From the IMG/VR virus record IMGVR_UViG_3300031576_000002, positions 141,228-205,227 of that record: 64,000 nt of DNA; one strand, 5' to 3'. Positions 3,804 through 60,067 of the stretch are shown piece by piece (within the stretch, counting starts at the first letter, position 1; every line of letters begins with the position of its first letter). The translations under genes and the position numbers were made by a program. The notes below the pieces were generated by a model that saw only the letters and a list, made by a program, of their open reading frames with translations, had not been told where the DNA came from and ran no database searches.

Positions 3804-3833
3804 ACTATACCCCTCAGAATCACGATTACGCGC
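3804..3833 (-). promoter_or_regulatory. Phage promoter GCGCGTAA-N16-TATAGT driving the ncRNA
   Basis: Matches the motif recurring across the window. Confidence 0.6.
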
Positions 3834-3951
3834 GGGCAGCCTCTACGGCCTCACCAGAAGCAACGATCTGCGTAGACTTGCGTCGAACCCTTTTTAGCGC
3901 CTCGACTTGAAGTTCGAGCGGCTGCCCGGCAGCATCGCAACCCTAACTTCT

Positions 3952-4575
3952 CTACGGCCCCAAAAGACGAATTGCTCTTCTGAGGTAGCCTGCTTGTACC
4001 GGCCCGTGCTCGCAATCATTCAGGCTCGGCCGCAAGCGGTGGTAGTAGTTCATGCGAATGGCCCAGTCCATCACACTCTTGACTCTGGACGGCTCAGGCG
4101 ACTCGCCAGGATCTCCCGTGCAGATGTAGCCTTGCAGATTGTCCTCGACGTCAAACACCTTGATTCCGTGCCCGCCCTCCCAGACAAGCCGGTGCCCGGT
4201 CTTCGGATCCTCGTCCTCGATGAGCGGCTCGACTTTGCCGTACTCACCCACGTTCGCGGGATCCGTTTCATCCCACCAGTGCGCGAGCAGATGCTTCAAC
4301 CGCGACTCTCGCCGGTGAGGCCGAATCCTTGAAGTCGTGTCCATGTAGCCAAGCCTCCGGTAGTCGAACCCTGGCAGAATAGCAATCTTCTGCTCCGGGA
4401 AATATCCACGCCTTTCCGTTACCGCGGACTGCCCCACGACCTCCGTAAACAGCGCTGGCAGCGCGGCAGGAGGAACCGTCGCAGCATGCCGGTTGTAGGC
4501 TGCGACTTCTCCACGCCCTGAGAAATCAAAGGATCCGGCTAGATGTGCAAGGATGTCATGCACGCCGTTTATCAT
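3952..4575 (-). CDS. C-terminal half of a split conserved phage protein (VHDxxxH...GExxAY...ALFTExxGQ)
   Basis: Continues the NLHFRG motif of 5067-5468; own ATG overlaps the HNH gene end. Confidence 0.75.
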   Translation of the reverse strand: MINGVHDILAHLAGSFDFSGRGEVAAYNRHAATVPPAALPALFTEVVGQSAVTERRGYFPEQKIAILPGFDYRRLGYMDTTSRIRPHRRESRLKHLLAHWWDETDPANVGEYGKVEPLIEDEDPKTGHRLVWEGGHGIKVFDVEDNLQGYICTGDPGESPEPSRVKSVMDWAIRMNYYHRLRPSLNDCEHGPVQAGYLRRAIRLLGP

Positions 4576-5089
4576 GAGGGCAGTAACCGTACAAACCGAG
4601 ACTCATATTGCAATTACAGCACAAAACCCGGTAACCCTCCGGATAGCCCTCTATTCTAAGCTCGTGAAATATCTCGCCCCTGTACCGAGATTTAGCTCTA
4701 TGCTGCCCACCCCCTCCACGGACGTGATCTAAGCACAAAAATTCGAGTAGCTCTTCCCCGCAGCATGCGCAGGCAGGGTGATCCAGCTTGCTGTAATGGC
4801 ATAGAGCTTCGTAGCGCTTGCTTCGCCGCCACTGCTTCAAATAAATTCGTCTCCTCTCCCGGAAAACAGGATCCTTTCCCCGTCGCCTGCTGTACTCTCG
4901 GAACTTCTCGGGACTAGCTTTGAAATACTCACGCGCCTGCCCCAAGACCTTCGCTCGAAACTCGGGCTCTTCGTGATACCGTTTGCGCTTGGCGGCAAGC
5001 ATGCACGCCTTGCACTTCCCGTAGGTACGGTAAAATTCTCTGCGTAGCTTAGCCGTCCCGCACCGATTACATATCTTTAGAGTGTCCAT
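4556..5089 (-). CDS. HNH (endonuclease VII-like) homing endonuclease
   Basis: N-terminal CxxC..CxxC; CACCG...LCLDHV...VLCCNCN...YGYCPH nuclease motif. Confidence 0.85.
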   Translation of the reverse strand: MDTLKICNRCGTAKLRREFYRTYGKCKACMLAAKRKRYHEEPEFRAKVLGQAREYFKASPEKFREYSRRRGKDPVFRERRRIYLKQWRRSKRYEALCHYSKLDHPACACCGEELLEFLCLDHVRGGGGQHRAKSRYRGEIFHELRIEGYPEGYRVLCCNCNMSLGLYGYCPHDKRRA

Positions 5090-5468
5090 GCACGTAGCAT
5101 AACATGAAAATACCCCGAAAGTGAAGGTTCTGATCTTGGGTAAAGAAAGGGTGCTCCGGACCTCCGGTGAATACCTTGAGCCGGTTGTTCTGCGTTACGT
5201 CCTCGACCATCTCCTCCGCATTGGCGTAAGGATTCTCGTCCACATACTCCACTTCAAACTTAGAAGTAATCCTGCGGAAAAGCTTGTCAAGATGAGCTAC
5301 GAGTGCTTGGTAGGACGGCACCGCAGACGCATCGTGAGCAGGCGCTTTCTCGTAAGCAGTAGCAACGGCTTCGAGGTATTCATCCCAGTCCACTGGCATC
5401 AACTTGGCCAAACGCTCAAGTAACTGCGCGTTTTTCTCTGGCGCAGGTGTATAGTAGTCAGCATGCAT
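5067..5468 (-). CDS. N-terminal half of the split protein (NPY...HP...NxxFRG)
   Basis: Conserved-looking part ends at FRG where the HNH insert begins; ATG lies inside the TIR of cassette 1. Confidence 0.75.
   Translation of the reverse strand: MHADYYTPAPEKNAQLLERLAKLMPVDWDEYLEAVATAYEKAPAHDASAVPSYQALVAHLDKLFRRITSKFEVEYVDENPYANAEEMVEDVTQNNRLKVFTGGPEHPFFTQDQNLHFRGIFMLCYVHGHSKDM
5426..5455 (+). promoter_or_regulatory. Phage promoter GCGCGTTT-N16-TATAGT, separated from the gene at 6712 by the cassette
   Basis: Motif match; TSD of cassette 1 overlaps the -10 box. Confidence 0.45.
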
Positions 5469-6687
5469 GACTGCTTAAGCCGCCACTTGCATAGCAGGTA
5501 AGCAGCCTTCTCGTTTCACAGAGGAACTTACAAGCGTATCCTCTCCACGAAGGGATAGCAGAGCCCGGTTTAAGACGTTTTTAGCCGCGTTGACATCTCT
5601 ATCAAGGACCAAGCCACAAGCAGAGCAGATATGGACTCTTTCACTCAAACTCTTCTTCACAGTCATTCCACATCCGCTGCACTCTTGGCTGGTGCCTCTG
5701 GGATTGACTTTTACCACTATCCTACCAGCTTCTTCCGCTTTGTAGGACAGCATGTGGAGCAACATCCCCATTCCAACATCTTTGAAGCTACGCCTGAATC
5801 CACGGCTGAGACCCTGGCTCATACCTTTCAGGTTCAAGTCTTCCACCGCAATCAGATCATACTCTTTGACCAAAGACTTAGACACTCCATCAAGAATATG
5901 CTTCCGAGTTCTTGTAACTTTCTGCCAAGCCTTAGCCAGTACCTTGACGGCTTTCCTTCTACGCTTAGATCCCTTCTGTCTCCTGGATACCGTTCTTTGA
6001 GCATGCTTGAGCTTCTTCTCGTTCTTGGCGTAAACACGTTGCCGCTCAATCAAGATGCCGTCTGAGGTAGCGACTAGAGCTTGCATGCCTAGATCAATGC
6101 CAATGACTTTGCCAGTCTTGAGAAGAGGAGCTGGAAGCGGTAGCTCACAGGATAAGACGGCGTACCAGCCGTCAGCTTCTCTTTTGACTGTGACCTCTTT
6201 AACCTTGGCATCAGGCGGAAGCTCCCGATAAGGATTCCAGCGGAAGTGTCCCAGCTTGGAAAGATGTAGCTTTTTGCTGTCAAACTTGAAACCTGACTGA
6301 TTGTATGTGAAGGAGTCGTACCGATCCCTACTCTTGAATCTGGGAAAGCCTGGCTTCTCTCCACGCTTGACTCTTCTGAAGAAAGCCTTGTACGTTTTGT
6401 CCAGTTTTTGAAGGACTGGGTGAAGAACTCTTGAATAGATCGTGTCATAGCCTTCTACCTGCTTTGAAACATACTTAAGCTCTAGGCACTGATCGTAGAA
6501 GCTGAGAGTTCTATTATGCTGCTTCCACTCCAGGATTCGTTGTTCCAAAGCACAGTTGTAGAGGAAGCGGCAGAAATCCAGAAGCCGCTGGAGATTGATC
6601 TCCTGGGCCTTGGTAGGTTGGAGGCGGAACTTGTAGGAACGGCGCACGGCTAGAGTGTATCACAAGGGAGTTAAGGAATCACGCATG
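5462..6687 (-). mobile_element. TIR-bounded tnpB cassette 1 (1226 bp, no transposase)
   Basis: Ends CATGCATGACTGCTTAA / rc CATGCGTGATTCCTTAA; flanking repeats TAGTAGTCAG (5452-5461) / TAGTAGTTAG (6688-6697). Confidence 0.85.
5475..6647 (-). CDS. tnpB: TnpB RNA-guided endonuclease, 390 aa
   Basis: YKFRLQPT...R.LYN.AL; RuvC GIDLG, AVEDL, DRDVNAAKN; Zn ribbon CSGCG/CSACG. Confidence 0.97.
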   Translation of the reverse strand: MRRSYKFRLQPTKAQEINLQRLLDFCRFLYNCALEQRILEWKQHNRTLSFYDQCLELKYVSKQVEGYDTIYSRVLHPVLQKLDKTYKAFFRRVKRGEKPGFPRFKSRDRYDSFTYNQSGFKFDSKKLHLSKLGHFRWNPYRELPPDAKVKEVTVKREADGWYAVLSCELPLPAPLLKTGKVIGIDLGMQALVATSDGILIERQRVYAKNEKKLKHAQRTVSRRQKGSKRRRKAVKVLAKAWQKVTRTRKHILDGVSKSLVKEYDLIAVEDLNLKGMSQGLSRGFRRSFKDVGMGMLLHMLSYKAEEAGRIVVKVNPRGTSQECSGCGMTVKKSLSERVHICSACGLVLDRDVNAAKNVLNRALLSLRGEDTLVSSSVKREGCLPAMQVAA

Positions 6688-11965: not shown

Positions 11966-12014
11966 GGAGTCTCCTTTCAAAAATATCATACAACCGCATT
12001 CAAAAAATTTCCGG

Positions 12015-12088
12015 TGGGCACGGAAGGAATCGAACCTTCGACCACTCGGTTAAAAGCCGAATGCTCTAACCAACTGAGCTACGCGCCC
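12015..12088 (-). tRNA. tRNA-Lys(UUU)
   Basis: GGGCGCG-TAGCTCAGTTGGTTAGAGCA-TTCGG-CTTTTAA-CCGAG-TGGTC-GAAGG-TTCGATT-CCTTC-CGTGCCC-A; followed by CCG, not CCA. Confidence 0.96.
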
Positions 12089-13726: not shown

Positions 13727-13755
13727 AGTATAGTCTTATGCGCCTATAGTGTCAA
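13727..13755 (-). promoter_or_regulatory. Near-consensus sigma70 promoter
   Basis: TTGACA-N17-TATACT. Confidence 0.8.
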
Positions 13756-14372: not shown

Positions 14373-15955
14373 TTTCCCTCACGCTTGCGCGGGCTTGATG
14401 ACCATCACGGGTACACGACCGCCGCGCATCTTCAGGCATTCGTCTATCCGCTCTGCCACGTCTGCGAGCTTTTCCGCGTCCGCTTCTACTCTAGCCAGAG
14501 CTTTGGCATACTCTGCCCGCTCGAAATCTGGAAGATTGCGCAACACGATCGTCGCCGCGCTTCGGCCCAGATACACCATAGTAAGAGCCAGGTCGGATAG
14601 ATCCAGATGTCCCTCATCTATGCAGGTGTTGACAACTGCTTCAAGCCTACTCGTGGCGCGCTGCATGTCCTCCTGATAGACATCCTCTTCTGAATTCAAA
14701 ACGTCCTCCGATCCTCAAACTTGAAGCCTGCGGCTGCAAGGTGGGCGCTTACCTGCGCAATCGCGCGTGCTTGGTGAGCTGCGTACTCTACCGCGGTTCT
14801 GGGGATGTCCAGCTCCCGCTCTGAATTCTCGATCGCGTTCTCCAGGATCTTCCACGGCATCGACTCGACCAAGGCGAGGGTGTCTTCACTCACACGGCGG
14901 AAGATGAGTCCCGCGCTCGGATAGCCCCACATTTCTCCAATAGCGAGGAGGTTGACCTGGTTCTTCGTCCAGGCTACATGGACAGGGTTGAGAGCTTCAG
15001 TCGGCATTTTTGACGGCCTCCCTGACGCTGTCCAGCGTCCGCTCGATATCGCTCAGACGATCTACGATCGGCTGGACGGCTTCGTTCACATCAGAAGGCT
15101 GAGCCGTACTTCCTATCTCGCCAGAGATGTCTTCAAGCCTTTCCAAAATCTTGTCGTAGTCACCCTCGACGCTGCGGATCCGGTCGCGCAGGTAGCTGAA
15201 CTCCACCGCCATCCAGCGACGAAGTTGTTCGAGCGTCAGCTCTTCCGAATCGGCCGGCTGCACCGACGGCTGCAACGGCGACAGAACTGTAGGCTGGAGC
15301 TTTTCTGCTTTTTTCATCGAGCCCTCAGTGCGCCATACACGGCGCTGATTTTGGATGCTTAGAAGAATCGTAACGCAGGCGCAAAGTCCGGTAGAGCACG
15401 GACAAGTCCGCGTCTTCTGCGCCTCCTACTAGAATACCGTTCTTGTACACGTCGGCGCGGAATACTCGATCTGCGCCATCCCACCAGACCTCGGCCCAGA
15501 ATGCTGCCGCTGCTACGGGAGCCCAGACCGCTTGTGCCCGGAGTTGCTCTGCGGTACCAGCTTCTACTTCCAGGCCGGCGATGTCGGTCATGGTCAACGC
15601 ACTCTCGGATAGCTGAGGAGGGCGCATGTAGTTGTGCCAGCACAACTAGGTAGGCTTAGCCTTTCTACTTTCTAACTGCTCCAGATCTTTATGCGCCGCT
15701 CTCAAGGCAACAACAGAGTCCTTCAGGAAGTCGGAGATCACTTCTCGCTCCACCTGAGTCGTCGCTGTATCGAACTCTTGCCTGAGAAACTCCAACGCCT
15801 TCGTGTGCCGGTGGATCTGTCCAAGAATGCGTGCTCGTGCCTGGCGTATCTCAGATACTTTTCGCTTCTTCTTGGGCTCTTTCTTGGGCGGAAGTACCCG
15901 CGTGGACCCGAAGTCATTCATGAAGTCTTCGGCGGCTGGAAACTATCACCTTTAT

Positions 15956-17658: not shown

Positions 17659-17931
17659 GTTTTCAGCACTAGGCGGCCGACTGCTCTTCCGTTGCCAATG
17701 CGCTAGCCGCGTTCTCTGCTTCCCACCGTTCCAGATCCACTTCGAACAGGCAGGTCTGCACGAACCCGATCACGGCTTCGGCACCCCGCCGCTCCAGCTC
17801 GCTGTTCCACTTCGCCTTGCGCTTGTGCTCGACCTTGCCCTCTTCCCGGATGCGTCGGGCTTCCTTGGCCTTCTTCACCTTCTCCTGCTTGCGCGACTTG
17901 GACTTTCGCATTTCAGTTGCCTCCTGATTCT

Positions 17932-17962
17932 ACTATACCGCGCCAATCTTAGAATTCCGCAC
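17932..17962 (-). promoter_or_regulatory. Phage promoter GTGCGGAA-N17-TATAGT
   Basis: Recurrent motif, followed by AGGAGG and ATG 17911. Confidence 0.7.
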
Positions 17963-18769: not shown

Positions 18770-18820
18770 CGGACGTACTATACAGCGCGCTTCCAAAAAT
18801 ACGCACCTATCCCGTCGAGC

Positions 18821-20375: not shown

Positions 20376-21618
20376 GCACCTATGTTACTTGAAGCGGGAG
20401 TACAGGACTAACTTACATGGCGCTGCTTCGCTTCTCAGCGAATTCCCGGTCGGGCAACTGAAAGGCCAAGGCGAATCTGTAGTGCCGCCTCTACCATGCC
20501 CAGGTCGTCAGCAATCATGCGCTCATGCAAATCAGGAAAGACGCGCACGGTGTCCGGTAGATTGAATGCGCGCCAAATCCTACTGACCCCTGCCCCTCCT
20601 TCCGGTGTGTCGCCACCGTGGTAGATAGCTGGAACAGGACGACCTTCCCCCATCGTCATCGACACTCTACCTCGTGGGATTCCGGCGTAGTGGCCTTCCA
20701 GACCCCGTAACTGTTTCTCCCAGAGCATCCGTAGCTCTTCCAGCACAACCGGCCAAAGACTTGCGTGGTCAGAATCGGGATAGTCGCCTTCGTGAAAAGA
20801 CGTCAGATCCCAGACAAACCCATCCTCAGCCGGAATAGGCAGCCACCAGTAAATCCCTACCGCAGCTCTGCCCTTCAAGCGTAAGCGTGCAAGCCGCGCT
20901 CGCCGCAGAGAATCGCGTATTCTACTTTTTGGCGGTTCCCGCGTGGAAGGCTAGAGGCGGGGCCGCTCCAGATAGTGCAGCTTCAGCGGCTTCGGGAATT
21001 CCTGGAGGAACGTGAATCCTGCTTCTTGCACAGGAAGCTCCGCAGAGCTTGCAACTCGTAGCTTCTTCAGCAAGCGCATCGCCTGCCCGAGCGCCTTCTT
21101 CTGCCCGACCTTCTTGCTGTAGGTATCCATGTCGGTGCAAAAAGAGTAGCCGTACAGCTCGATGCCTTCGGGCGTGGTGATCCGGCATTCCGTGATCGCG
21201 GTAATGCCGCGCTCTCTGCCCGTGATCTTCAACCAGACTTGGAGTGGCTGAAAGGGTCCAGCAACGTGCTTTTTGTTTTTGTCGTAGAAGTTGAGCCCCG
21301 ACCGGAAGCATGTCCGGTAGCGGACCTTCAACCCATCGTAGTTCTCGACCTCCATGATGTCTCCTCGGATTGGACTTACTATTCCCCTGGCCTGAACTGC
21401 TCGAACGCTTCGGCGGCTTCGTAGAATGCGGGTATCTTCTCCCACAATCGTTTCAGAGCCTCTTTCTTCGTCTTTCCTCTACCCTGCAAGATCGCGCCGC
21501 TCTTTCCCCCAGCCACGCTCTTCAAGACAAGGTCGGCGTACCAACGCCTCGACTTCGGATACGCCTGCCAGAAGTTGACTTCCAGCTTGTAGGAGAGTTC
21601 GGTTTTCGCCATGGTTGT

Positions 21619-21649
21619 ACTATACCCCACGCTTTCAAGAATTCCACAC
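21619..21649 (-). promoter_or_regulatory. Phage promoter GTGTGGAA-N17-TATAGT, leaderless
   Basis: ATG (21612) 6 nt after the -10 box. Confidence 0.7.
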
Positions 21650-27312: not shown

Positions 27313-28956
27313 TTTGGTTGGTCTTTCCAGCCCGCACTGAAGTCGTCCAATACAAAAAGGACTTCAGACTTGCACATGATCGGCTCTGTGGCGGCCCGCA
27401 TCTTAGTCATGAAGGCGGCGTCCTCCGCCTCCATTTCCTTCCCTACTTCATCAGCCCGCACCATGCCGTCGATCGCCATGAACATCAGGGAATCGTCTAC
27501 CTCGATGGTGTTGCCCCCAAGGTCGATGAACGAATGCAAGGTTCCTTGTTTGTCCACCCCTCGGAACACCATGAGGTTGATTGATGGAACCGAGAAGCCG
27601 ACGCCTTGGTAGCACTTGTCCTCACACTCGATCTCGGGGGAGAGGTAGACCATCAGCGGGCCTTCATTTTCGTTCATGTTTCTTTCCGCGGGATTAACCT
27701 GGCGCACAACGTCTCTAGAATGCGATGGTCCTCCAGGTACTCGATCTAAGCCACCATGGATTTGGCCCGATACCAAGCATAGTGCTCCGCCAAAATTTCG
27801 AGCCAAAGCTCGAAGTAGCTCATCCTGATTTCCTCTGGGCATCCCACATGTCCACCCCCACGACGATACCGTGCAGGTAGATCATGAGGCTTGCGGCTAG
27901 CGCAATAACCGCCTTGGGTAACTCCGGCACGACCTCGGGTTCCCGAAGCATCAGCGCTAGGTACATCGTCCAGCACGAAACGAACAACACCACCGTGACG
28001 CCGCGTAGCCAGCGGCCCAGCAACTTTGTCTCTTTCGGTGTCATGCTCATCTCAGGACCAAGCCGTTCGACCAAATGGTCACAGATTTCATTATCGTGTC
28101 GAAGACCGCCCGCTCCTGTCGGACCGCACGATGAAACTCCTCCACATCATCCCGACACAAATCCACGGGGCGACGCCCATCCATGATCGCGTCCCAGACC
28201 TTGATACGTCGGGCCTCCAACACCCACATGAGACGATCTCTCAAGACGGCCCCGAACACCAAGGCCTCGGATTTACTCACGGTCGGTACCATTTGATTCC
28301 CCCCAATCCCTTCCGTCGTACTGCCCCACCAGAGATAATACACCAACCAGTAGTGCAACCAGACCTACACTACCGTCTCGAACAACCGCTTAGTGTCTTC
28401 GGTCTCGTCGATCCAAGTGGCGCCACACCAGTAGCAGTGGCGGTGCAGATGCTCGCGCCCAGGGCAGTCCGAGCAGCACCTTTCCCACGGGCGGAAGAGG
28501 AAGCGCTCGATCAAGCGGCTGAGCCACCAGGGTTGTCCAGGCGCCCAGCAGGTCGCGAGTTCCGATTCGACCCCGCACTTGCGACACTGGCCCTGGGTGC
28601 CGGGCAGCCCCCGATAGCCCCAGGGGTAGCCCACGGGGGCCAGCGGGGGGATGCGCTCGACAAACGATGGGCGTGGCCCCTGGATCGTCACGGTAGAATC
28701 CTTCCCCAGTACCGTCCGTGCGACCGCTGGACCGCCGCCAAGGACTCGCCCCGCAGCACCACGACCTCGACATGGGACTTGTCCCTAGCCTCCTCGCGAT
28801 CAATCCGGAAGCGCTCTGCCAGAGCTTCACGGCCCCGCGTACCGAAGTCTTCCAGCCGCAGGAGCTTGCCCGCGGGCCGGTCGTACACGATGAGGAAGTT
28901 GAGCATCTCCATAGATAATACACCAGCGCACGCCGGAATATGCGCCGTGCTTCGCG

Positions 28957-42505: not shown

Positions 42506-42528
42506 TGAAGTCTCCTTGGCTCGAACTT

Positions 42529-42559
42529 ACTATACCGGCGCGATCTTATTTTTACACAT
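42529..42559 (-). promoter_or_regulatory. Phage promoter ATGTGTAA-N17-TATAGT
   Basis: Shares GTAAAAATAAGA with the 43339 copy. Confidence 0.75.
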
Positions 42560-43338
42560 CTGTCTTTCAGAAGACTTGAAGGAGCGCAGAAGTGAGCCCC
42601 GGTCGCGGCCCGTTCAACAACACTCACTTGTCGGCTGCGCCACTATCCACCAGTGCCGCAATTCACCGGTTATCGGAAACTCATGGCGAAACCTATCCGC
42701 GCTCCTTCAAATCCTCTGTGTAGCCTGGAATCGGATTCTCTTCCCGCCACGCGACCAATTCGACGTATGGGGGCTTAACATCGCTCCAAACCGCGTTTAG
42801 CCGCAGTTCAACCGTTTCTTTTATCGCAGCTTCAAAAAATTGGAGCGTAGTATCCCGGGCTGCGGGAAACTCCTTTCGCGCAATCCGCTCAAATCTCACC
42901 CAGCCAAAACTAAGATCTGAGCAGCGATGAATGAAATGCCCCCGCTCAAACTGCGCCCCGTAGTAACTCGGGGCGCCATCCTTCTCAGGATCGTAGGGGC
43001 GCGTCAGGATCCTTTCGTCCTCGATCATATCGTTGAGCACGTCAGAATAGGCCGCGCTCACGCCGCAGCCAGAGCACTTGAGGAAGATGCGCCAGTGATC
43101 GCCTTTGGCCAGCATCAGGACTCCTTGAGTGGAAACAACTTCTCCCACTCTGCCCCCGAGCACTCTTTGCAGGTACGGATGCAACCGTCGGGGTGGTCAG
43201 CCCGCAATCCGGCTCGGCGGAACCAGTCGCCACAGTAGAAGCGGTGGAGAAATCCCAACGCAACGACGACTTTCTCCAATCGGTCGATGCGATCTTCAAT
43301 CTTCATAGGACTTCCCCTTCCTACTACCCGCGCTAACT

Positions 43339-43369
43339 ACTATACAACTCGATTCTTATTTTTACGCAC
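43339..43369 (-). promoter_or_regulatory. Phage promoter GTGCGTAA-N17-TATAGT
   Basis: Recurrent motif. Confidence 0.75.
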
Positions 43370-44771: not shown

Positions 44772-45077
44772 TCATTTCTTGCCTCGTTTTATTTTGGCTA
44801 GGGTGGTACCAACACTTTTTCGTGCCCATCCCGTCCGTTCCGCGATCTGCTGAATCTTCAATCCTTCTGCTTTCAGTTTCTTCAGCTTCTCGATTTCCAC
44901 AATGCGGCGGTGCGGTTCAACGCCGAGCTGGGGTAGCCGCTCACGGATCGCGGAAATCTGCGATCCGTCCATGCACGCAGTCTTGAGGAGGGAGAGACCC
45001 GCTCTATGCAACTTCAGAATTTCTTCGTCTGGCAGCATTCTTAGTCTTTCTCTCGCACGCACCCTGTCGCGCATCAA
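44772..45077 (-). CDS. Tandem HTH DNA-binding protein
   Basis: LHRAGLS...IRERL; GLKIQQIAERTGW; paralog of 52024-52320. Confidence 0.7.
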   Translation of the reverse strand: MMRDRVRARERLRMLPDEEILKLHRAGLSLLKTACMDGSQISAIRERLPQLGVEPHRRIVEIEKLKKLKAEGLKIQQIAERTGWARKSVGTTLAKIKRGKK

Positions 45078-46399
45078 CCGCTTTCAGAATCAACACAAAA
45101 CGGTCTGAATCATCTTTTCCTCGCCACCGTGTACACCAGCGGCGATAAGCTCCTGTGACCAGCGCCATATCCTCTAGCATTCCACAGACTCTGAGATCTT
45201 CAAGTGCTTCTGGCATCAGAGATGTTACAACTTCTTTTTGGCGTAGATAGGTCTTCCGGACCTCGCTCAACTTTCGCGGGGCTCTCTTTTTAGCTGGGCG
45301 CTTTGTTGCCATTACTCACGCCCCTTAATCAACTTCTTGAGCTTGGACAGCGTCCGTTCCAGCCGCTCCATTCGGTGCTCGACCAGGTGACTCTTCATCA
45401 TCGCACCGACTAGCGTGTCGTTCCCCTGAGCGCTGTCAATCGTGTACCCACAGTAGCGACAGCGCAGCCAGAACTTCTCTGCACTCCCCCCGTCTTGAAC
45501 CACGTTTCGGTCGGGAGAGGAGTCGTGCGTTTCGTACCGCCAGCGGAAATCTACATAGCCCGCTCCGACGCGGAACTCATAGGCACAGGGAGAACTCGTC
45601 AAATGCTCCAGCACTTTCCGATCCGTCAGCGGTAGCCGCGCCCAAACTTTCTCACCGGGGTCGAGGAACTTCGTAGACTTGGAATCTTGCCGAAGCGCTG
45701 CGCGGATTGCTACGTCGCACGCAATCGCATACTTCTCTGTCGCGTGCCTGGACTCGGCAGGTAGCTCGACTTTGAGGATTTTTTCAGCCACGGTCGAGTA
45801 CCTGGTCGATGAGCGCGTGAAGCTGCTCTCGCAGCAGAGCACGCTGAACCGGATCTTTCAAGGCAGCGTCTGGAATTTCGGCGCGGAACTTGAGCACTCG
45901 CCCCGTACCTAGAAAGAGAGATCCGTCCCATCCGTGGGAGAACGCTTTGGGAACTGGCACATCTTCTACCCGAGCCGGCGATTCCATGTCAATCCTCCAA
46001 TCTGATCTTGGGCAGCGGATCCGGCGCAGTCTTCATCGGCGTGTCAAAGCAGACTTTCACTCCACCTTCGGGGTGTTCCTTCCAGCTAACGGCGTGCCGA
46101 ATCACCTGGAGTAGGTCGTAGGAGCGTTTCGCCTCCACGGCGAGAGCAGACTCCGTACACCCCAAGGAGCCGCTGTCCAGCCCGTACAGGACCTTCCTCA
46201 AAAGAGCGAACGCCTCGTTCACCTCCCACGAGTACATCTTATCCAGGTCCGGCCACTGTCCATTCGACATGGGACGGTTAGAACGGATATATCTGATCTC
46301 GACTAGCTGCCCCATGTGAATGCGGCCGTGCAGGTCCAGCGCATTCAACAGTGCGTCTACCTGCTCTCGCGTGAGTTCCAGAGTGATCTTCATAATTGT

Positions 46400-46430
46400 A
46401 CTATACAACCCGCGTCAGAATTTTTCCCAC
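46400..46430 (-). promoter_or_regulatory. Phage promoter GTGGGAAA-N17-TATAGT, leaderless
   Basis: ATG (46393) 6 nt after the -10 box. Confidence 0.7.
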
Positions 46431-46627
46431 TACCCGCCTTCCAGCTCGCGCTCCTCGGCCAGCCATCCGGGAATCGTAACTGACTCTCCGTCGCGGTCTA
46501 CGATCTGGGAGAGTGGAATCCAGACCTGACGGCCGTCCTGCTCAACTAGCAGGGCTCGATCCGTCTCGCGAACGATTCGTACTTCGCAGCGCACGCTGGC
46601 GTCATCTTCAAATCCATTGAATCTCAT
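46430..46627 (-). CDS. Small conserved phage beta-protein
   Basis: ETDRALLV...VWIPLSQI...IPGWLA. Confidence 0.75.
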   Translation of the reverse strand: MRFNGFEDDASVRCEVRIVRETDRALLVEQDGRQVWIPLSQIVDRDGESVTIPGWLAEERELEGG

Positions 46628-48153: not shown

Positions 48154-51100
48154 CTACCTGTACCTTTTCCCAGCAGCCCGCTCAACGTGGAAAAAGGCAG
48201 CGGCTCCGCAGCCAGCGCAGAACGGCGTGGTGCGCGTTTTCGGCTTCGCTTGCTGCAACGTAGTCCTCGTATACCTGGCAGTACGCATTGAAGTGGTAGA
48301 ACCCCGCTCTGACCCACCACTTACGAGCTGGATCGCTCGACACCCAAGTCGTCAGACTAACAGTAACTTGCAAGCCGTCATGCCAAAAATCATCTCGCCA
48401 CCCGAGCGGCGGGGACATTCCTTTCACCCCAGCAGGATGAATGATTTCAATTGGCCTGCTCATGTTTTCCCCGCGGTGTCTTCCTCTGACTACTATACCC
48501 AGACCAGAGTGAAATTTTACACGTCACGGCATGAGCGCCTTGTTCGCAGGATCCTCCCACGTCCTTCCTAACAATCCGGACAGGAGAGCCTCCGCTTTGA
48601 TTGCTTCGACCTGCTGGCGCATATTGCGCTCGATCTCGAATCGAACGCGGTAGTGTTTCTCGGCGTCTCTCAGATGAGAGGCCAACCGTTTGAGGCGTGG
48701 AATAGTTTTTTCCGCTTCGTCCCGAAACTTGACAAGGCTATCCCGTGCGGTCAGAGATTGAGGAATCCACTCCTTGATCTCTTCCGCCCGCTGCGCCAGC
48801 AGCTCTGCCATGTGCTCAAGCGACTCGCTCAGATTCAAGTTACGCCTCCCGGTCTACCGTCTCCGTCCGGAGGTAGATCCAGGTTCCGTTCAAGTCGCAG
48901 TCCGTCCCCGCAGAAAGCATTTTGGTATAGCGCCGAACTTCCCCCGTCGTCGTACAGCGATAGACATACCACGTCTCCCGGATCATCCACACGAAAAGGA
49001 GAGGTAGGAGAAAGCGCATGTATTAGTTCCTGTGGGAGCTATCAATGCGGTCCAGCAGATTCTGGTACTTCGACTTCTTCTTGCCGCCTCTTTCGTCCCG
49101 TAGCGCTTGCACTCCGACTAGCGCTAAATCCTCCAGCAGTTGCTTGGGCAGCCTGCGCGTAAACTCCTCAACGGTAACTCCGTCGATGTAGTGAACGCCC
49201 TTCCTGACTTCTACTGCGTGCTCTTTCCCTGCAATCCTTACTTTCCCCTTCGCAGCTTTCACGGCTTATGATCCAGTGCTGCGTGGACAACGCGAAAGGA
49301 TCCCCCGCAGAGTTGGCAATCCCCTGGAGCACCAGGATGTTTCTCCGCGTGCATTGTGACCAGCGCCGAGAACAGGACTTCGAGCAGTCCGCGCTCGACC
49401 GTGACCAGCGCGGGATCGCGGACGGAGAGGGCGCGGATCGCGGCGGCAAGCGTCTCGGGATGCACCCGCTTATTCTGGCGTTCGGTTCGCCCGGCAGAAT
49501 CGCAAATCCTCGCCGCCTCTGCGAGCGCCGCCTCGCGGGCGCGCTGGACGATGGCCGCGACGTGCGCGCATCGGTCTGCGGTATGTGGAGTACCATCGCC
49601 TTCATCCCAGATCCAATCACCCTCGCGCGGCATCCACCAGAGATTCCGAATGCAGACCGGACACGGCCTGCAATCCTTGACCATGTAGCGATCGGATACT
49701 GCGCACGGAGATGCCGGGATCACGATTTTGTTTCCGCGCATGTATGGCTCGTAGCTCACGACTCACCTCCCAGCTCTTCCCATAGAGGGGCTGCGTAGCA
49801 GACCGAACCCCCTTCGCCATCCTCGGTGGCAGCATCGTGGATCCACTCCACATCATGCTCCGATTCGTATCGGATCGCTTCGAGTTCGGTAGCGCAGTTT
49901 CGCTTGCACACTAGCTGCGCAGCTTCCAGCATCCCGTCGCGCTTGCCTTTCCGGTAGGTGTAGTTACACGCCTCTTTGCAGTCGGCCACGTTCACGGCTC
50001 CCCTCGCAGCACGTCATGGATCCGAGCAGCGTCGCAGTCCGCCTGTTCCGGGTGATACCAGTCACCGTCGAGGACTTCGAGAGGGTGTTCCTCTCGGCAC
50101 CACTCGCACACCATCTTAGCCGCCGCGCGCATGCCATCGCGGTGGGCGTCGGCGTTCGCAGCCCACGCCTCGCGGAGCTGCGCGCAGAGCCAGCGGGTCT
50201 CATCGCCGTACTCGCAAACGCTGGTAAACAGGTCGTCGTCCAGCCCTGCCTCAATCCTGAACAGCTTTTCCTCGTTGGTCATGGTGCGTCCCTCCTCGAC
50301 TCTCCGAATTTCATCGTGCGCCTTCGCGCCCACCACCACGGGGCCTGCTCCCATCCGGTCGGACGCTCGAAAACCGAGGTCCCGTTCCCGTGCTCGTTCG
50401 CAGCCCCGAGCCACCCACGTACAGCGCGGAACCGAACGCCGGCCCGGATCGGTGGACCCCGTACCCAGTGCCGATGCCGGTGGCAGAGCACGATCTGCTG
50501 GCCTTGATTTGAATCCCCGGTCAATGAGTCGAACGCGAGCAGGCACGCACTAGCCGACGCCCAGCGGCCCGAGCAGCGCTTGCCGGCGCGCGTGATGGCG
50601 ATGCAGCGGGCGTGGCGGTAGTCGGTCATTGCTTCCTCGCGATCCGGTAGAGCCCGACCAAAATGTCAAACCCCTGCGCACACGCGATCCCCAGCACGAA
50701 CCCGCTGACCATATCGTCGGTCATCTCTTCCCCCTCACGCGCACGGCGGCAGCGACCACCGGCACGGCAGATCGGCCACCGTCCGCCGCCCATTCTGCGG
50801 CATGGCAAAGCGGGACGCGCATTGCCTCCACCGCATCCAGCAGCGCGGTTACCCCGCTGCGCTCGCGGCAGCGCGCCCGGGTGTGGGGGGATCCGTGCTC
50901 TTCACGCGCTGACTGCTTGACGCTGGCCTTGTCTGCCGAAACGATCAACCAGCATCCACAACCCACGCAGCGGATCATGGCTTTCCCTCCCGAGACCGCG
51001 CAGCGGATTCGCGGATCCGCGCCTCGTGCGCAGCCTCGTGGCGGAGCAGGTCCTCAGTCGGAGCACCGTCTGCGAGCATCCGGAGCGTTTGCCCGACCTT

Positions 51101-52023: not shown

Positions 52024-52320
52024 TCATCGCTTCTCTCCATCCAGCACGACGGTACGGCCACGATTAGAACGAAGCCAGTTACGAATCGTGTGGGGATTCC
52101 ATCCGGTCTGCTGTGCAATCTGCTTTTGATTGAGACCTTGCTTGAGCAGTTTACGGAGCCGCTTCGCATCGATCACCTTGCGCCTGCCTCTCAGCGGAAC
52201 TTTGACGCCCAGTTCCTCCAAGCGTTCTCGCACTTCGTAGTTAGGAATGCCGGCGATTGTTGCGATCCTGAGAATCGACAATCCCCGCTTGCGCAGGTCG
52301 AGAAGTTCCGCATCATTCAT
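52024..52320 (-). CDS. Tandem HTH DNA-binding protein
   Basis: LRKRGLSILRIA...VRERL; GLNQKQIAQQTGWNPHTIRNWL. Confidence 0.75.
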   Translation of the reverse strand: MNDAELLDLRKRGLSILRIATIAGIPNYEVRERLEELGVKVPLRGRRKVIDAKRLRKLLKQGLNQKQIAQQTGWNPHTIRNWLRSNRGRTVVLDGEKR

Positions 52321-52552
52321 GTTCTGCTTTCCGTGCCGTCCCGCGTAGTTCAGGCCGATACCACAGGCCGTCTTCGCTAAGACCAACTTGCAAGTCCTCA
52401 CCACATTTCGAGCAAAACGTCTGCTGGCCTACAGTCCAAGAAGGTCCAACTCCTTGACACCGCTCTTCAGCAGTAAATCCAACTAGAAACACTCCTGCCC
52501 CGCACTGAGGACAAGTAAGCATTGCAACTTCTTCGGCATCGTCCACACTAGA

Positions 52553-52583
52553 ACTATACACCGGAGACTCCAAGATTCCACAC
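52553..52583 (-). promoter_or_regulatory. Phage promoter GTGTGGAA-N17-TATAGT, leaderless
   Basis: GTG 6 nt after the -10 box. Confidence 0.7.
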
Positions 52584-54826: not shown

Positions 54827-55089
54827 TACCTGCCCTTAAGACTGGAAACTTGATCCATCAAGTAGATTTGATCCTGCGCCAGGTTCTCAAAATTCTGATT
54901 CGTCTTGTCCAGCTCTTGCAGCAAGACTTTCGCGTTCCCTTGCTGCACGCTGATGATCTGCTCGGCCAACTTGGCCGGTCCGGCGTACTCCCGTAGAAGC
55001 TCGATCTCTTCCCTCTGCGTCTTGACTACGTGCAGCAGAAAGAGCACCAGGACCACCCCTAGGAATGTCGTCAGGCGTCGCACACGTAC

Positions 55090-55120
55090 ACTATACAACT
55101 GCTGCCTGGCGTTTACGCAC
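55090..55120 (-). promoter_or_regulatory. Phage promoter GTGCGTAA-N17-TATAGT, leaderless
   Basis: GTG (55083) 6 nt after the -10 box. Confidence 0.7.
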
Positions 55121-55551: not shown

Positions 55552-55875
55552 TCATCCCGGCTCACGGACATGCTCCGTTACGCCCTCATGGTCGGGCGGA
55601 TTCCACTTGCGATCTCTGTTCTCCGCCATCTTTGCGGCTACGTGAGCAAGCAGATCAATAGCGCGCATTCCGGCTAGATCCGAGAGTCCCATGAGAAGTA
55701 TGAATATGTCCGCGACTTCGACACAGTAGGACGAATCATTAGCGGCGTAGGCTTTTCGGAACTCTTCCACCTCTCGAACTAGGTGCGCAACTTTTCCTTC
55801 TACCGTTCCGTTCGGGAACGTAGAGCGGCTCCAGGACGTAATGTCGCAGAACACTTCTTCAAATCGGTCGCGCAT
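55552..55875 (-). CDS. dATP/dGTP pyrophosphohydrolase (DUF550, MazG-like)
   Basis: WS..TFP...HL.REVEE...EVADIFILL...KM..N..RKW. Confidence 0.85.
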   Translation of the reverse strand: MRDRFEEVFCDITSWSRSTFPNGTVEGKVAHLVREVEEFRKAYAANDSSYCVEVADIFILLMGLSDLAGMRAIDLLAHVAAKMAENRDRKWNPPDHEGVTEHVREPG

Positions 55876-56486
55876 CGCTACCTACTATACCCTGCACACT
55901 TAGGCTTCTTGCACGCCTTCGCGTCTTGATCCGCCGTCGCGTTGGCGAGACAGATCCGCTCGATCTCGGCAGGCCGAGATGCTTCTAGCTTGCGCAAATG
56001 GCAAATGCCGTGCTTCTTGGAATACCAGAAGCACTCACGGGGGTAGACAGGCTGGCTAGCGGACAACGCGACCCTCTCGGCTCGCGCGCCAGGATAAACC
56101 GCCTCAGCTTAATCGTCAATCAAAGTGACGAATTATGCGGGCCAGACGCTCATGGATGCCTGGAACTCGCTCCCATTCGTCCGTCTGCGCGGCATCTTCT
56201 GCTGCCGCATCGGTGTCGATGTAGCGCTCCAGATCTTCCCCAAAGACTGCTCGCAGGTCTTCTGGATTGTCGAGCAGCTCGTTCAACTCGGACTGCGCTC
56301 TAGCCTCGATCAAGCTCTCGCCCAGTAGGTCGCCGGCAGCGTCTCGTACCATGCTGCGCATTTCCGGCTCCAGGTCTTCTCGCAGCCGGTCATAGTCGAG
56401 ATGCCTCGCCAGCCAAACAGGATCGAATGTCTCAGGCTGCTCGTGTAGATCGGCGGTGAGCTGCCTTACGAGTTCTCTGAATAGGG

Positions 56487-57011: not shown

Positions 57012-57026
57012 GACTGGATCCTGTCG

Positions 57027-58562: not shown

Positions 58563-58611
58563 AAGTCCACTATCCCGTAAATACGCCGAGTTCTGTTAAG
58601 CTCTCGTACGC

Positions 58612-58785
58612 CTAGTTCTCCTGCCTTCGATACTCCCGCTCGATCTCTCGCGACCGCTCCCACGCTCTTGCAGAACCGACCGCTAGCGCCAATGCCGCGA
58701 CTCTTAGGATCTCGGAAACGACCCCGCAGATAGCACCCGCAAGTCCGAGAACCCATGCAAAAGCAAGAAGCGCCAGTCTTTCCAC
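58612..58785 (-). CDS. 57-aa membrane protein
   Basis: Manual read MERLALLAFAWVLGLAGAICGVVSEILRVAALALAVG...RRQEN. Confidence 0.5.
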   Translation of the reverse strand: MERLALLAFAWVLGLAGAICGVVSEILRVAALALAVGSARAWERSREIEREYRRQEN

Positions 58786-59506
58786 GCACTCAGCTTATCC
58801 GAGGGCGGGGACGCCGCTTTAGGTCATAGTCGGGCGGATGTTGCTCAGGTCTTCCCGCGACGAGAGCGTGGCGCCCACCGATCGAATCGGTGACAGCTCG
58901 GTCGTCACCCGCATCTTGAAACGGTTCAAGATGTTGGGGCTCTTCTGAAGGTTCTCGATCAACTTCTCGGACAGTGCCGTACGGATCTCTTCGGCTGTGC
59001 CGAAGTCCCACTTCTGCGCGAAAAGGATGCGCTCCAGCGCCGCACGCAGATCCGCTTCGACGTTGTCGGGAAGACTGATGACCCGGTGCAGAATCTGGGC
59101 TTTCTGGAGCCGCGCGGCAAGGTACGCATAGAGCGTAGTCTTGATCGCCTCGTAGCCCTTCTCCTTGAGCGTCCGGTCAAAGAATTCCGGCGTGGGTGGG
59201 ACGAACTCCAGCTTTCCATTTGCCCTTACGCAGATCAACATTCGCCAGCCTCCATTCCGGTAATAAACCCCTGCATCAGCTTCTCTATCACGCCTAGACT
59301 CTCGTGCAGAGATTCGTCCAGTTCATCCAGATCTTCCGGTGTACACGCGCCCCGTCGAATACCATAGCCTCGAATGAGTTGTGCGACAAGTTTGAGGAGT
59401 GCGTAGTCATCTACTACGGACAAGCCGTCTTCCGCTAGAACGCTGATGATGCGTTCTGCGGCAACCGCCATCTGATTGGTCGTCGGATCTGCCATGACCC
59501 TTAGTA

Positions 59507-60067
59507 TTATACACGCGCCCCGCGTGTAGCTTTCGCTTTCGTGGCCTGCTTGACCGCCTCTACTGCATAATAGCTCGGTCGGGTAGGATCTCCTGCTGGA
59601 GCGCCCCACCCCTCCATCGGTGTAATCTGAATAACGGTAAGGCCCGCTTGTTCGGTCATAACTCGGGCACCTGCGTCGGTAAAGCGAAAGTAATCTTCTG
59701 GATCCCGATGGACAGGCTGGCAGAACGCTGCATGCCAGAGCAGTTGACCTTGGGGCCTCAACACTCTCGCGAATTCCTGTAGAGCCTGCCATGGAGCGTA
59801 GACATGTTCGAGAAGTGCTAGGGCAAGGACACGGTCGAAGCTCTGCTCTCGGAACGGTAGGTAGACACAATCTGCTCTGACGCTCGAAGACTCCTCTCGC
59901 TTTTCTGTATGGAAGTCAGCACATATATGCCGCGCCTTCTGAGATGAGATCTCTTCTGTCTTTGGATAACGGCCAGAGCCTACTTCCAAGACTCGGGCGC
60001 CTTCAGGGATCGCCAAGATCCAGTTGACAAAGACCTTATCGCTGTGACGGTCTGCCCAGATAGGCAA
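59507..60067 (-). CDS. Class I SAM-dependent methyltransferase (Methyltransf_11-like)
   Basis: VLEVGSG, LPFREQSFD, LLEHV..P, RVLRPQG, DYFRFT. Confidence 0.88.
   Translation of the reverse strand: MPIWADRHSDKVFVNWILAIPEGARVLEVGSGRYPKTEEISSQKARHICADFHTEKREESSSVRADCVYLPFREQSFDRVLALALLEHVYAPWQALQEFARVLRPQGQLLWHAAFCQPVHRDPEDYFRFTDAGARVMTEQAGLTVIQITPMEGWGAPAGDPTRPSYYAVEAVKQATKAKATRGARV

What the first reader, a model, noticed from the sequence alone, without database searches (positions are those of the whole stretch)
3804..59536. Recurring phage promoter GTGYRDAA-N17-TATAGT, often leaderless
Seen: -10 boxes at 3804, 5450(+), 17932, 18777, 21619, 42529, 43339, 46400, 48492, 52553, 55090 and 55884, plus a TATAAT variant at 59506. 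All follow a G and have a GTG(C/T)-rich upstream box instead of TTGACA (spacer 16-17), unlike the canonical sigma70 promoter at 13727. Several put ATG/GTG 6-7 nt after the -10. Inference: a regulon read by a phage sigma factor or activator (the tandem-HTH paralogs at 44772 and 52024 are candidates), in a host that translates leaderless mRNA.
Basis: partly seen in the sequence, partly recalled or inferred. Interest (0 to 1): 0.6.

Follow-up and report, generated by a model that had tools for sequence, protein, structure and literature searches.

The report
Phage-specific promoter class, often leaderless
A 205-kb uncultivated phage carries about a dozen copies of its own two-part promoter signal (GTGYGKAA, 16 bases, GTATAGTA), half of them placed so that the messenger RNA starts at the start codon, and the phage's single sigma-factor gene, which lies outside the window, is the most likely reader.

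Summary
On the coding (-) strand, GTATAGTA occurs 15 times in the closed 205-kb genome where 1.8 are expected, and once on the other strand. It is the most intergenic-enriched k-mer. Eleven sites lie in the window. Eight or nine of those carry a GTGYGKAAWW box exactly 25 nt upstream of the hexamer (leave-one-out, Fisher p 8e-21). Eight of 18 sites have ATG or GTG 6-8 nt after the hexamer that opens an ORF of at least 77 aa, against a 5.5% baseline. The sites at 5450(+) and 59506 are not members.

A second, canonical class (TTGACA-N17-TAGACT-like) also exists, and its -35 and -10 elements never mix with those of the first class. Two such promoters sit in tandem upstream of the only sigma-like gene in the genome: 203 aa, ECF-like, genome 55,679-56,290, outside the window. 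I found no phage RNA polymerase, MotA or AsiA, and no third motif.

The best model is a cascade: host sigma-A reads canonical promoters, the phage sigma is made, and it reads the GTG-box/TATAGT promoters.

No RNA data, no close relatives and no known host are available, so which factor reads the promoters remains inferred (about 0.5). I rate this a new member of a known kind.

The parts
55883..55914 (-). Class II promoter. Partial box GTGCAAGAAG, then GTATAGTA. ATG at 55875, 8 nt after the hexamer, opens a leaderless 107-aa ORF (55552-55875).
   Evidence: The ORF matches PF04447 (MazG-like), residues 13-106 to profile positions 6-94 of 97. A TTGACG-N17-TATCCT match lies about 200 nt upstream at 56091-56119.
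55089..55120 (-). Class II promoter. Box GTGCGTAAAC, then GTATAGTG. GTG at 55083, 6 nt after the hexamer, opens an 85-aa ORF.
   Evidence: leave-one-out p 2.3e-3.
52552..52583 (-). Class II promoter. Box GTGTGGAATC, then GTATAGTT. GTG at 52546, 6 nt after the hexamer, opens a 77-aa ORF with weak zinc-ribbon matches. The HTH paralog gene follows.
   Evidence: (p 1.4e-4).
48491..48522 (-). Class II promoter. Box GTGTAAAATT, then GTATAGTA. A 28-nt leader runs to the ATG at 48463. The operon includes the DNA methylase at 46624-48153.
   Evidence: p 1.7e-4.
46399..46430 (-). Class II promoter. Box GTGGGAAAAA, then GTATAGTA. ATG at 46393, 6 nt after the hexamer, is also the independently called gene start (134 aa).
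   Evidence: p 1.1e-4.
43338..43369 (-). Class II promoter. Box GTGCGTAAAA, then GTATAGTA. A 32-nt leader runs to the start at 43306.
   Evidence: p 1.9e-4.
42528..42559 (-). Class II promoter. Box ATGTGTAAAA, then GTATAGTA. A 23-nt leader with AAGGAG runs to the ATG at 42505.
   Evidence: p 7e-3.
21618..21649 (-). Class II promoter. Box GTGTGGAATT, then GTATAGTA. ATG at 21612, 6 nt after the hexamer, is also the independently called gene start (77 aa).
   Evidence: p 2.4e-5, the best box.
18776..18807 (-). Class II promoter. Box GTGCGTAT shifted by 1 nt, then GTATAGTA. ATG at 18769, 7 nt after the hexamer, is in frame with the AAA-ATPase ORF and gives a 266-aa product.
17931..17962 (-). Class II promoter. 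Box GTGCGGAATT, then GTATAGTA. A 20-nt leader with AGGAGG runs to the ATG at 17911.
   Evidence: p 1.3e-4.
3803..3834 (-). Site with GTATAGTA but only a weak box (CGCGCGTAAT). It is intergenic, 84 nt upstream of the GTG at 3719.
   Evidence: leave-one-out p 0.17. A member by its -10 only.
11984..12015 (-). It lies just after tRNA-Lys.
   Evidence: PWM scan, upstream listing, tRNA.
13727..13755 (-). Class I (canonical) promoter: TTGACA-N17-TATACT.
   Evidence: It is one of six perfect TTGACA-N17-TAnnnT sites in the genome, all intergenic and all on the coding strand.
44772..45077 (-). Tandem-HTH protein, paralog 1. It lies inside the operon of the promoter at 46400.
52024..52404 (-). Tandem-HTH protein, paralog 2. 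It lies just downstream of the promoter at 52553.
   Evidence: (HTH_23, E 1e-7).
5449..5456 (+). GTATAGTA on the non-coding strand with no box and no ORF. Not supported as a member.
   Evidence: 1 observed against 1.8 expected on that strand.
59506..59513 (-). TGTATAAT with no box, overlapping a hairpin stem, 10 nt before the ATG at 59495. Membership is not supported; it may be a promoter with a -10 element only.

Best explanation
The sites are transcription start signals of a phage-specific promoter class (class II). The consensus is GTGYGKAAWW, 15 nt, then K-G-TATAGT-A, with the RNA starting about 7 nt after the hexamer. In about half the cases this falls on the A or G of the start codon, giving leaderless mRNA. 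The others have short leaders with a Shine-Dalgarno sequence.

The phage has no RNA polymerase of its own. Early after infection, host RNA polymerase with its primary sigma would read the phage's canonical TTGACA-N17-TAnnnT promoters (class I). Two of these stand in tandem in front of the phage's only sigma gene, a 203-aa two-domain ECF-like protein at genome 55,679-56,290, outside the window.

That sigma then loads onto host core polymerase. Its region 4 would read the GTG box and its region 2 the G-TATAGT-A element. This would turn on the accessory-gene region in the window (methylase, MazG-like, NYN nuclease, HTH proteins and many small ORFs). Through sites with no box or a weaker one at genome 122,427 and 121,189, it would also turn on the head of the structural module.

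Shown by sequence statistics: the motif, its strand and intergenic bias, its spacing, the start-codon geometry, the second promoter class, and the sigma gene with its promoters. Inferred: that the sites fire, the timing, and which sigma reads them.
For: Motif statistics:
- GTATAGTA is found 15 times against 1.8 expected on the coding strand only.
- It is the top intergenic k-mer.
- The box scores Fisher p 8e-21 by leave-one-out.

Promoter geometry:
- 8 of 18 sites have ATG or GTG 6-8 nt downstream opening an ORF of at least 77 aa, against a 5.5% baseline.
- Four of these coincide with gene starts that were called without any knowledge of the motif.
- One is a full-length MazG-like domain.
- Sites without this geometry have 20-45-nt leaders with a Shine-Dalgarno sequence.

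Two promoter classes that do not mix:
- Six perfect TTGACA-N17 sites pair with TAGACT, TAGATT, TACTAT, TATACT or TACGAT, never with TATAGT.
- Of 12 intergenic GTG boxes, 7 are followed at the fixed distance by TATAGT; the other five are not class II sites (one is the 59506 TGTATAAT site itself).
- The window segment 41-60.5 kb has no excess of canonical promoters: 7 found against 6.6 expected.

The sigma candidate:
- It is the only full-length sigma-like ORF in the genome.
- It matches TIGR02937 at E 2.8e-7 over positions 4-162 of 165, and Sigma70_r4 at E 1e-4.
- Its nearest homologs are bacterial ECF sigmas at 25-27% identity.
- The language-model neighbours that carry a Pfam family are all sigma-70/ECF.
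- Two canonical promoters lie in its 137-nt upstream gap.

Other supporting points:
- The genome is closed: the ends overlap by 227 bp.
- It has no T7-like RNA polymerase hit and no DFDGD motif, and no MotA or AsiA.
- No third enriched motif exists that the sigma could read instead.
- The composite motif is absent, even with one mismatch allowed, from five Acidobacteria genomes that hold the closest TnpB homologs.
Against: - There is no transcript evidence. No run on record as RNA holds this DNA.
- The sigma falls below the curated cut-offs of every model, and its region 2.3-2.4 is diverged.
- A TAnnnT-type -10 is typical of group 1-3 sigmas, not ECF sigmas, whose -10 is usually CGT-like (my own knowledge).
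- The closest relative by capsid protein (L068) uses GTG-TATAAT or GTG-TATTAT at gene boundaries, also with a leaderless start. A G-prefixed -10 may therefore be a trait of the host's primary sigma.
- Several genome sites have the -10 element but no box.
- Anti-restriction-type genes (methylase, SAM-lyase-like) would be expected to be early, yet they sit behind class II promoters.
- The host is unknown, so its own promoter consensus could not be examined.
- The non-mixing argument is weakened by a palindrome that constrains the -10 of some class I promoters.
Confidence: 0.5

Rival explanations
1. Host primary-sigma holoenzyme reads the strong G-TATAGT-A element without needing a -35 element. 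The GTG box is the binding site of a phage activator that replaces -35 recognition. This would be a promoter-class switch of the T4 AsiA/MotA or Thermus phage P23-45 gp39 kind. The phage sigma would serve something else.
For: - TATAGT is a near-consensus primary-sigma -10 element.
- The relative L068 has GTG-TATAAT sites with no shared box and a leaderless start.
- Box-less GTATAGTA sites exist in this genome.
- A single 9-10-bp non-palindromic box at the -35 position resembles a MotA box.
- Switches from the -10/-35 class to an extended -10 class by small phage proteins are documented (PMC4124052).
- Two tandem-HTH paralogs are available as candidate binders.
Against: - No MotA or AsiA homolog was found.
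- TG is never at -15/-14, so the sites are not canonical extended -10 promoters.
- The -10 is far more invariant than in class I: TATAGT in all 11 sites, and no other TAnnnT follows any box.
- The HTH paralogs are themselves behind class II promoters.
- The only recognisable transcription factor found behind a canonical promoter is the sigma; most other class I-downstream proteins scanned had no Pfam match.
- No other motif is left for the sigma to read.
Confidence: 0.25
2. The sites are this phage's strong early promoters, read by unmodified host polymerase. The reader would be either the host's primary sigma, with the box acting as a non-canonical upstream element, or a host alternative sigma. 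No phage factor would be involved.
For: - The class dominates a region of many small accessory and anti-restriction-type genes, which looks like an early region.
- The host is unknown, so its sigma repertoire cannot be excluded.
- Known phage early promoters can deviate from TTGACA (my own knowledge of T4).
Against: - Perfect TTGACA-N17-TAnnnT promoters in the same genome show what the host primary sigma reads.
- A conserved box unrelated to TTGACA needs a specific reader.
- The motif is absent from five candidate-host-phylum genomes.
- Dependence on a host alternative sigma is rare for lytic phages (my own knowledge).
Confidence: 0.15
3. The motif is not a promoter. It would be a translation-associated or protein-binding repeat, comparable to the start-associated sequences of some mycobacteriophages, or an operator.
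For: The motif lies close to start codons. No transcript data exist.
Against: - The distance to the start codon falls into two groups: 6-8 nt, or 20-45 nt with a separate Shine-Dalgarno sequence. This fits a -10 element and not a ribosome signal.
- The motif has a T-A-n-n-n-T core and a bipartite layout with sigma-like spacing.
Confidence: 0.05

Closest known systems
Promoters of phage-encoded sigma factors: phiEco32 gp36 and Salmonella phage 7-11 (PMC4331800); Bacillus phage SPO1 gp28 and gp33/34 (my own knowledge)
   Same: The phage carries a diverged sigma-70-family gene. A well-conserved, low-copy motif lies in intergenic regions on the coding strand and differs from host-type promoters. 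In phage 7-11 the sigma gene is predicted to be reached from host-type promoters (PMC4331800). SPO1 middle promoters are likewise bipartite.
   Different: The phiEco32/7-11 motif is a single 12-bp element (TGTGATGTTATA) with no -35 box. The sigma here shows no detectable sequence relation to those sigmas. Many transcripts here are predicted to be leaderless. Nothing has been tested experimentally.
T4 middle promoters (MotA box plus sigma-70 -10, with AsiA) and the Thermus phage P23-45 gp39 switch to extended -10 promoters (PMC4124052)
   Same: A good -10 element is combined with a non-TTGACA element, or none, at the -35 position. These promoters coexist with canonical -10/-35 promoters in one genome, which suggests a temporal switch.
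   Different: No MotA or AsiA homolog was found. The box is centred near -33 rather than -30. There is no TG at -15/-14. The -10 is invariant rather than generic TAnnnT.
ECF (group 4) sigma promoters: GGAAC/T, 16-18 nt, CGT/GTT
   Same: The candidate reader is an ECF-like two-domain sigma. The box contains G(G/T)AA(W) at about -33 to -29, and the spacing is rigid.
   Different: There is no AAC core. The -10 is an 8-bp TATAGT-type element and not CGT-like.
Leaderless expression from a -10 element adjacent to the ORF, as in Deinococcus-Thermus, Actinobacteria and Thermus phages (PMC3160421, PMC12340547)
   Same: A TAnnnT element lies 6-8 nt before ATG or GTG with no Shine-Dalgarno sequence.
   Different: Here this is tied to one phage-specific promoter class and coexists with leaders that use a Shine-Dalgarno sequence. 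The host is unknown. A weak hint points to Acidobacteriota, where 10-19% of genes were predicted leaderless (PMC3160421).

Membership tests
Sigma-70-family promoter (general) | A -10 hexamer T-A-n-n-n-T placed about 7 nt upstream of the transcript start | tested here: inconclusive
   The hexamer is invariant. The start site is inferred only from start codons 6-8 nt downstream. No RNA data exist.
Canonical primary-sigma -10/-35 promoter | TTGACA-like -35 element 16-18 nt upstream of the -10 | tested here: not met
   At 17-nt spacing the hexamer reads GYGKAA, matching 2 of 6 positions. The tool's sigma-70 scan does not call these sites.
Extended -10 promoter | TG at -15/-14 (TGnTAnnnT) | tested here: not met
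   The -15/-14 dinucleotides are GG, TT, GT, CG or CT and never TG. Instead K-G occupies -14/-13.
Phage-sigma-dependent promoter class | The phage encodes a sigma-70-family protein | tested here: met
   TIGR02937 at E 2.8e-7 over nearly the full model; Sigma70_r4 at E 1e-4; Sigma70_r2 at 14 bits. All fall below the curated cut-offs. Homologs and language-model neighbours that carry a family are ECF sigmas.
Phage-sigma-dependent promoter class | A conserved motif distinct from host-type promoters, intergenic and co-directional with genes | tested here: met
Phage-sigma-dependent promoter class | The holoenzyme with the phage sigma initiates at the motif | not testable with these tools
   This needs in vitro transcription or a reporter assay.
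T4 MotA/AsiA sigma appropriation | MotA-like activator and AsiA-like co-activator are encoded | tested here: not met
   PF09114 and PF09010 give no match at E up to 1 in the closed genome. Analogues unrelated in sequence are not excluded.
ECF sigma promoter | AAC core in the -35 element and a CGT-type -10 | tested here: not met
   The box is GTGYGKAAWW with no conserved C. The -10 is GTATAGTA.
Leaderless mRNA | The start codon lies at the transcript's 5' end and no Shine-Dalgarno sequence is present | tested here: inconclusive
   The geometry is met at 8 of 18 sites (p 2.4e-6), and one ORF is supported by a full-length domain. The 5' ends have not been mapped.

The most novel reading that the evidence does not exclude
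An orphan two-domain (ECF-like) sigma of a 205-kb phage has acquired a new specificity. It would read a housekeeping-style TATAGT -10 element extended to 8 bp, together with a new -35 box, GTGYGKAA. It would drive a regulon made largely of leaderless mRNAs, as the second tier of a host-sigma-to-phage-sigma cascade, in an uncultured and possibly acidobacterial host. If so, this is a ready-made orthogonal sigma/promoter pair, and the first transcription programme inferred for this widespread family of environmental myoviruses.
Probability: 0.4. Interest if true: 0.55.

Novelty: new member of a known kind. Interest (0 to 1): 0.45.

Why it matters
The finding gives a concrete, testable sigma-promoter pairing in a phage lineage that has no cultured member. 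It predicts transcription units, and corrected leaderless start codons, for about a dozen operons. It also shows that the unknown host must translate leaderless mRNA. If the pairing holds, it adds a new specificity to the sigma-70 family and a possible orthogonal expression part. If the rival holds (host sigma plus a phage activator), it would be a new sigma-appropriation system unrelated in sequence to MotA/AsiA.

Tried and rejected
- **Megablast of 20 kb against cultured phages:** no match. DNA polymerase reaches only about 27% identity to Bacillus phages.
- **Exact composite motif in IMG/VR:** 36 contigs with one match each, mostly AT-rich, consistent with chance. No relative with several sites was found.
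- **Relatives found through window proteins:** none usable. Relatives found through the capsid protein: 65 loci at 34-52% identity with GC 40-68%, none enriched for GTATAGT around the structural genes. The long ENA contigs had no DNA on hand.
- **Sigma homologs in relatives:** the sigma is absent from three complete relatives. Some relatives encode their own unrelated sigma-70-family proteins.
- **Motif hunt in the complete relative G009:** inconclusive, because my gene caller performs poorly at 43% GC.
- **Sigma homolog searches:** only itself in the 90% clusters and two weak bacterial ECF hits among the representatives.
- **Single-sequence AlphaFold model of the sigma:** poor, pLDDT 46, so not used.
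- **RNA evidence:** the only holder is the source cave metagenome (two runs of one sample), and neither run is on record as RNA.
- **Host search:** TnpB homologs point weakly to Acidobacteriota at 41-47% identity. A search of 20 kb against 401 genomes of that phylum gave only short weak matches and no spacer-like hit.
- **Archaeal TATA/BRE reading of the A/T-rich box:** considered and rejected. The phage has an SLT peptidoglycan-lytic domain, Shine-Dalgarno sites and a sigma-70-family gene.
- **Z-genome idea, raised by the MazG-like gene:** no PurZ was found.
- **Rfam:** only tRNA-Lys.
- **Dyad and k-mer searches for a third motif:** noise only.


Full report
**Context.** The window is the last 64 kb of a 205,227-bp IMG/VR virus record. 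The record's two ends overlap by 227 bp with one mismatch, so the assembly is closed, with a unit length of about 205,000 bp. GC content is 56%. My own ORF and codon-score gene caller finds 297 genes, 292 of them on the - strand, covering 91% of the sequence.

The phage is a myovirus. It has a major head protein (phrog_2522, E 2e-47) and a tail sheath. It also encodes a family A DNA polymerase with a UDG domain, a UvrD-like helicase, SbcCD, a RecA with an intein, and an SLT-domain tail protein.

The window itself holds mostly small genes of unknown function. It also holds a DNA methylase, a protein with SAM-lyase/DUF3293 matches, an NYN nuclease, a MazG-like pyrophosphohydrolase, an AAA ATPase, two TnpB-like genes (the genome has three) and one tRNA-Lys. 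The only sequencing runs that hold this DNA are from one cave metagenome sample, and neither is on record as RNA.

**Checking the observation.** TATAGT occurs 18 times in the window against 6.7 +/- 2.6 in shuffles.

On the coding strand of the whole genome, GTATAGTA occurs 15 times with 1.78 expected (p 8.6e-10). On the other strand it occurs once, at window 5450. GTATAGT is the most intergenic-enriched 7-mer: 13 of 18 copies lie in the 9% of the genome that is intergenic.

I aligned the eleven - strand window sites on the hexamer. This shows G at -1 in 11 of 11, K at -2, and A at +6 in 9 of 11. It also shows an upstream box whose first G lies 25 nt before the hexamer, with consensus GTGYGKAAWW. 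The counts are G9, T9, G9, then A8, A11, W11.

The sites are not copies of one repeat, because their spacers and flanks differ. In a leave-one-out test, a box matrix built from ten sites scores the eleventh better than all but a fraction below 3e-3 of genome positions, for eight sites. The Fisher combined p is 8e-21. Sites 3804, 18777 (shifted by 1 nt) and 55884 are weak.

The box by itself is not enriched, with 44 matches on one strand and 30 on the other. Of the seven GTATAGT sites outside the window, only the one at genome 122,427 has the box.

**Evidence that the sites are promoters.** Eight of the 18 coding-strand GTATAGT sites have ATG or GTG 6-8 nt after the hexamer that opens an ORF of at least 77 aa. 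The baseline for all TANNNT hexamers is 5.5% (p 2.4e-6).

Four of these starts (window 21612, 46393 and 55875; genome 122,419) were already the starts chosen by the gene caller, which knew nothing of the motif. The ORF starting at 55875 aligns with the MazG-like family PF04447 from profile position 6, so the leaderless start gives a full-length domain.

The remaining sites sit 20-45 nt before start codons that have AGGAGG-type Shine-Dalgarno sequences. Distances of either 6-8 nt, or 20-45 nt with a ribosome site, are what a -10 element predicts and what a translation signal does not.

The site at 5450(+) has no box and no ORF, and it matches the chance expectation. The site at 59506 (TGTATAAT) has no box. 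I do not count either as a member. A likely extra member is at 11985: a GGAAAT box followed by TTG-TATGAT-A.

**A second promoter class.** Six perfect TTGACA-N17-TAnnnT sites lie in intergenic DNA on the coding strand. They are at window 13727 and at genome 56,383, 56,319, 14,168, 9,999 and 6,899. Three of them share a palindrome (CAGTCTnATTAGACTG) across the -10. One (9,999) is itself followed by a leaderless ATG.

Their -10 hexamers are TAGACT, TAGATT, TACTAT, TATACT and TACGAT, never TATAGT. Conversely, of the 12 intergenic GTG boxes, seven are followed at the fixed distance by TATAGT, and the other five are not class II sites. The two classes therefore differ in both elements and do not mix.

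The window segment 41-60.5 kb shows no excess of canonical promoters or terminators. There, class II is the only enriched signal.

**Who reads class II.** The closed genome shows no T7-like RNA polymerase hit, although that control search rang in no genome. It has no DFDGD catalytic motif in any frame, and no MotA or AsiA.

It has exactly one full-length sigma-like ORF, at genome 55,679-56,290, 203 aa. This ORF matches TIGR02937 at E 2.8e-7 over positions 4-162 of 165, and Sigma70_r4 at E 1e-4. All matches fall below the curated cut-offs.

It keeps the DxxQE core-binding motif and the region 4 helix-turn-helix, but its region 2.3-2.4 is diverged. Its only detectable homologs among 1.8 billion representatives are two bacterial ECF sigmas at 25-27% identity, one of them next to a Ser/Thr kinase. 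A profile that includes it hits ECF sigma structures. The language-model neighbours that carry a Pfam family are all sigma-70/ECF.

The 137-nt gap upstream of this gene holds two of the six canonical promoters. K-mer and dyad searches found no third motif that this sigma could read instead.

The simplest model is therefore a cascade: host primary sigma reads class I, the phage sigma is made, and it reads class II.

This makes them unlikely initiators. They could be later regulators, for example binding the class I palindrome, but that is speculation.

**Points against the main model.** A TAnnnT-type -10 is more typical of group 1-3 sigmas than of ECF sigmas. The closest relative by capsid protein (63% identity, locus L068) has three GTG-TATAAT or GTG-TATTAT sites at gene boundaries, one with a leaderless GTG and none with a shared box. 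A G-prefixed -10 could therefore reflect the host's primary sigma.

That favours the main rival. In it, host holoenzyme reads the -10 and a phage activator binds the box, in the manner of T4 MotA/AsiA or the P23-45 gp39 switch (PMC4124052).

Against that rival: TG is never at -15/-14, the -10 is invariant, no activator gene was recognised behind a class I promoter, and the sigma would be left without a target.

The composite motif is absent, even with one mismatch allowed, from five Acidobacteria genomes that carry the nearest TnpB homologs. However, the host assignment is weak, resting on 41-47% identity and no spacer-like match in 401 genomes.

**Comparison with what is known.** The logic matches phage-sigma promoter classes inferred or shown for phiEco32 and phage 7-11 (PMC4331800) and for SPO1. 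The sequence of the motif, the bipartite form with a housekeeping-like -10, and the high share of leaderless starts are particular to this phage.

Relatives of this myovirus family are common in metagenomes (118 capsid homologs). Some encode their own unrelated sigmas. None shares this sigma or this motif.

**Verdict.** The promoter reading is very likely correct (about 0.9). The factor that reads the promoters is unresolved: phage sigma about 0.5, host sigma plus a phage activator about 0.25, host polymerase alone about 0.15. I rate this a new member of a known kind, of moderate interest.

All gene coordinates outside tool outputs come from my own heuristic gene caller and carry that caveat.

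Noticed in passing
window 60051-60128 (- strand); also genome about 126,278-126,355, 61,592-61,669 and 54,958-55,035, and a related copy near window 15,600-15,680: A nested inverted repeat of about 65-78 nt occurs in five copies, mostly intergenic: GATAGG...CCTAGTTGTGG-loop-CCACAACTAGG...CCTATC. It folds at up to -46 kcal/mol on the transcribed strand, and the outer stems differ between copies. Two copies (55,025 and 61,659) begin with TAGGTAGTATAAT. Its function is unknown; possibilities include an RNA processing or terminator element, a DNA cruciform, or a mobile element.
   Followed up: partly
window 5475-6647 (-) and 18861-20033 (+); genome 2747-3919 (-): Three paralogous genes of about 390 aa look TnpB/IS605-like. 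One is among the very few + strand genes. Their nearest genomic homologs (41-47% identity) are mostly in Acidobacteriota MAGs, which is the only hint of the host.
   Followed up: partly
genome 56,319-56,412, 14,168-14,197 and 9,999-10,028 (outside the window): Canonical TTGACA-N17-TAGACT promoters share a palindrome, CAGTCTnATTAGACTG, that overlaps the -10. This looks like an operator for shutting off the early class.
   Followed up: no
genome 39,075-39,121 and 61,535-61,580 (outside the window): Two GTATAGT sites are followed by the same leader hairpin, GGGCTTGCCTCAAAATTYGAG...GAGGCAAAGCC. A third partial copy lies upstream of the gene at 37,847.
   Followed up: no
whole record, ends: Bases 1-227 repeat at 205,001-205,227 with one mismatch. 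The record is therefore a closed genome or has a short terminal repeat, although it is listed as linear and 85% complete.
   Followed up: yes
genome 21,112-24,396 and 49,808-51,688 (outside the window): Inteins are present: a LAGLIDADG/intein-splicing insertion in a 1094-aa protein, and an intein within a RecA-like protein.
   Followed up: no
window 28292-28330 and 28906-28935 (-): Two nearby sites share CTGGTGTATTATCT. The second lies 8 nt before an ATG. They may be further promoters with a -10 element only, of the GTG-TATWAT kind seen in the relative L068.
   Followed up: no
genome 135,359-136,029 (outside the window): A 671-nt stretch has no called gene. It is preceded by a class II-like site with TTTAGT (genome 136,081) and contains a TTGTCA-N18-TATTAT match. 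It has no Rfam hit.
   Followed up: no
window 55552-55875 (-): A MazG-like dATP/dGTP pyrophosphohydrolase (PF04447, the family that includes MazZ of Z-genome phages) is present, but no PurZ was found in the genome.
   Followed up: yes
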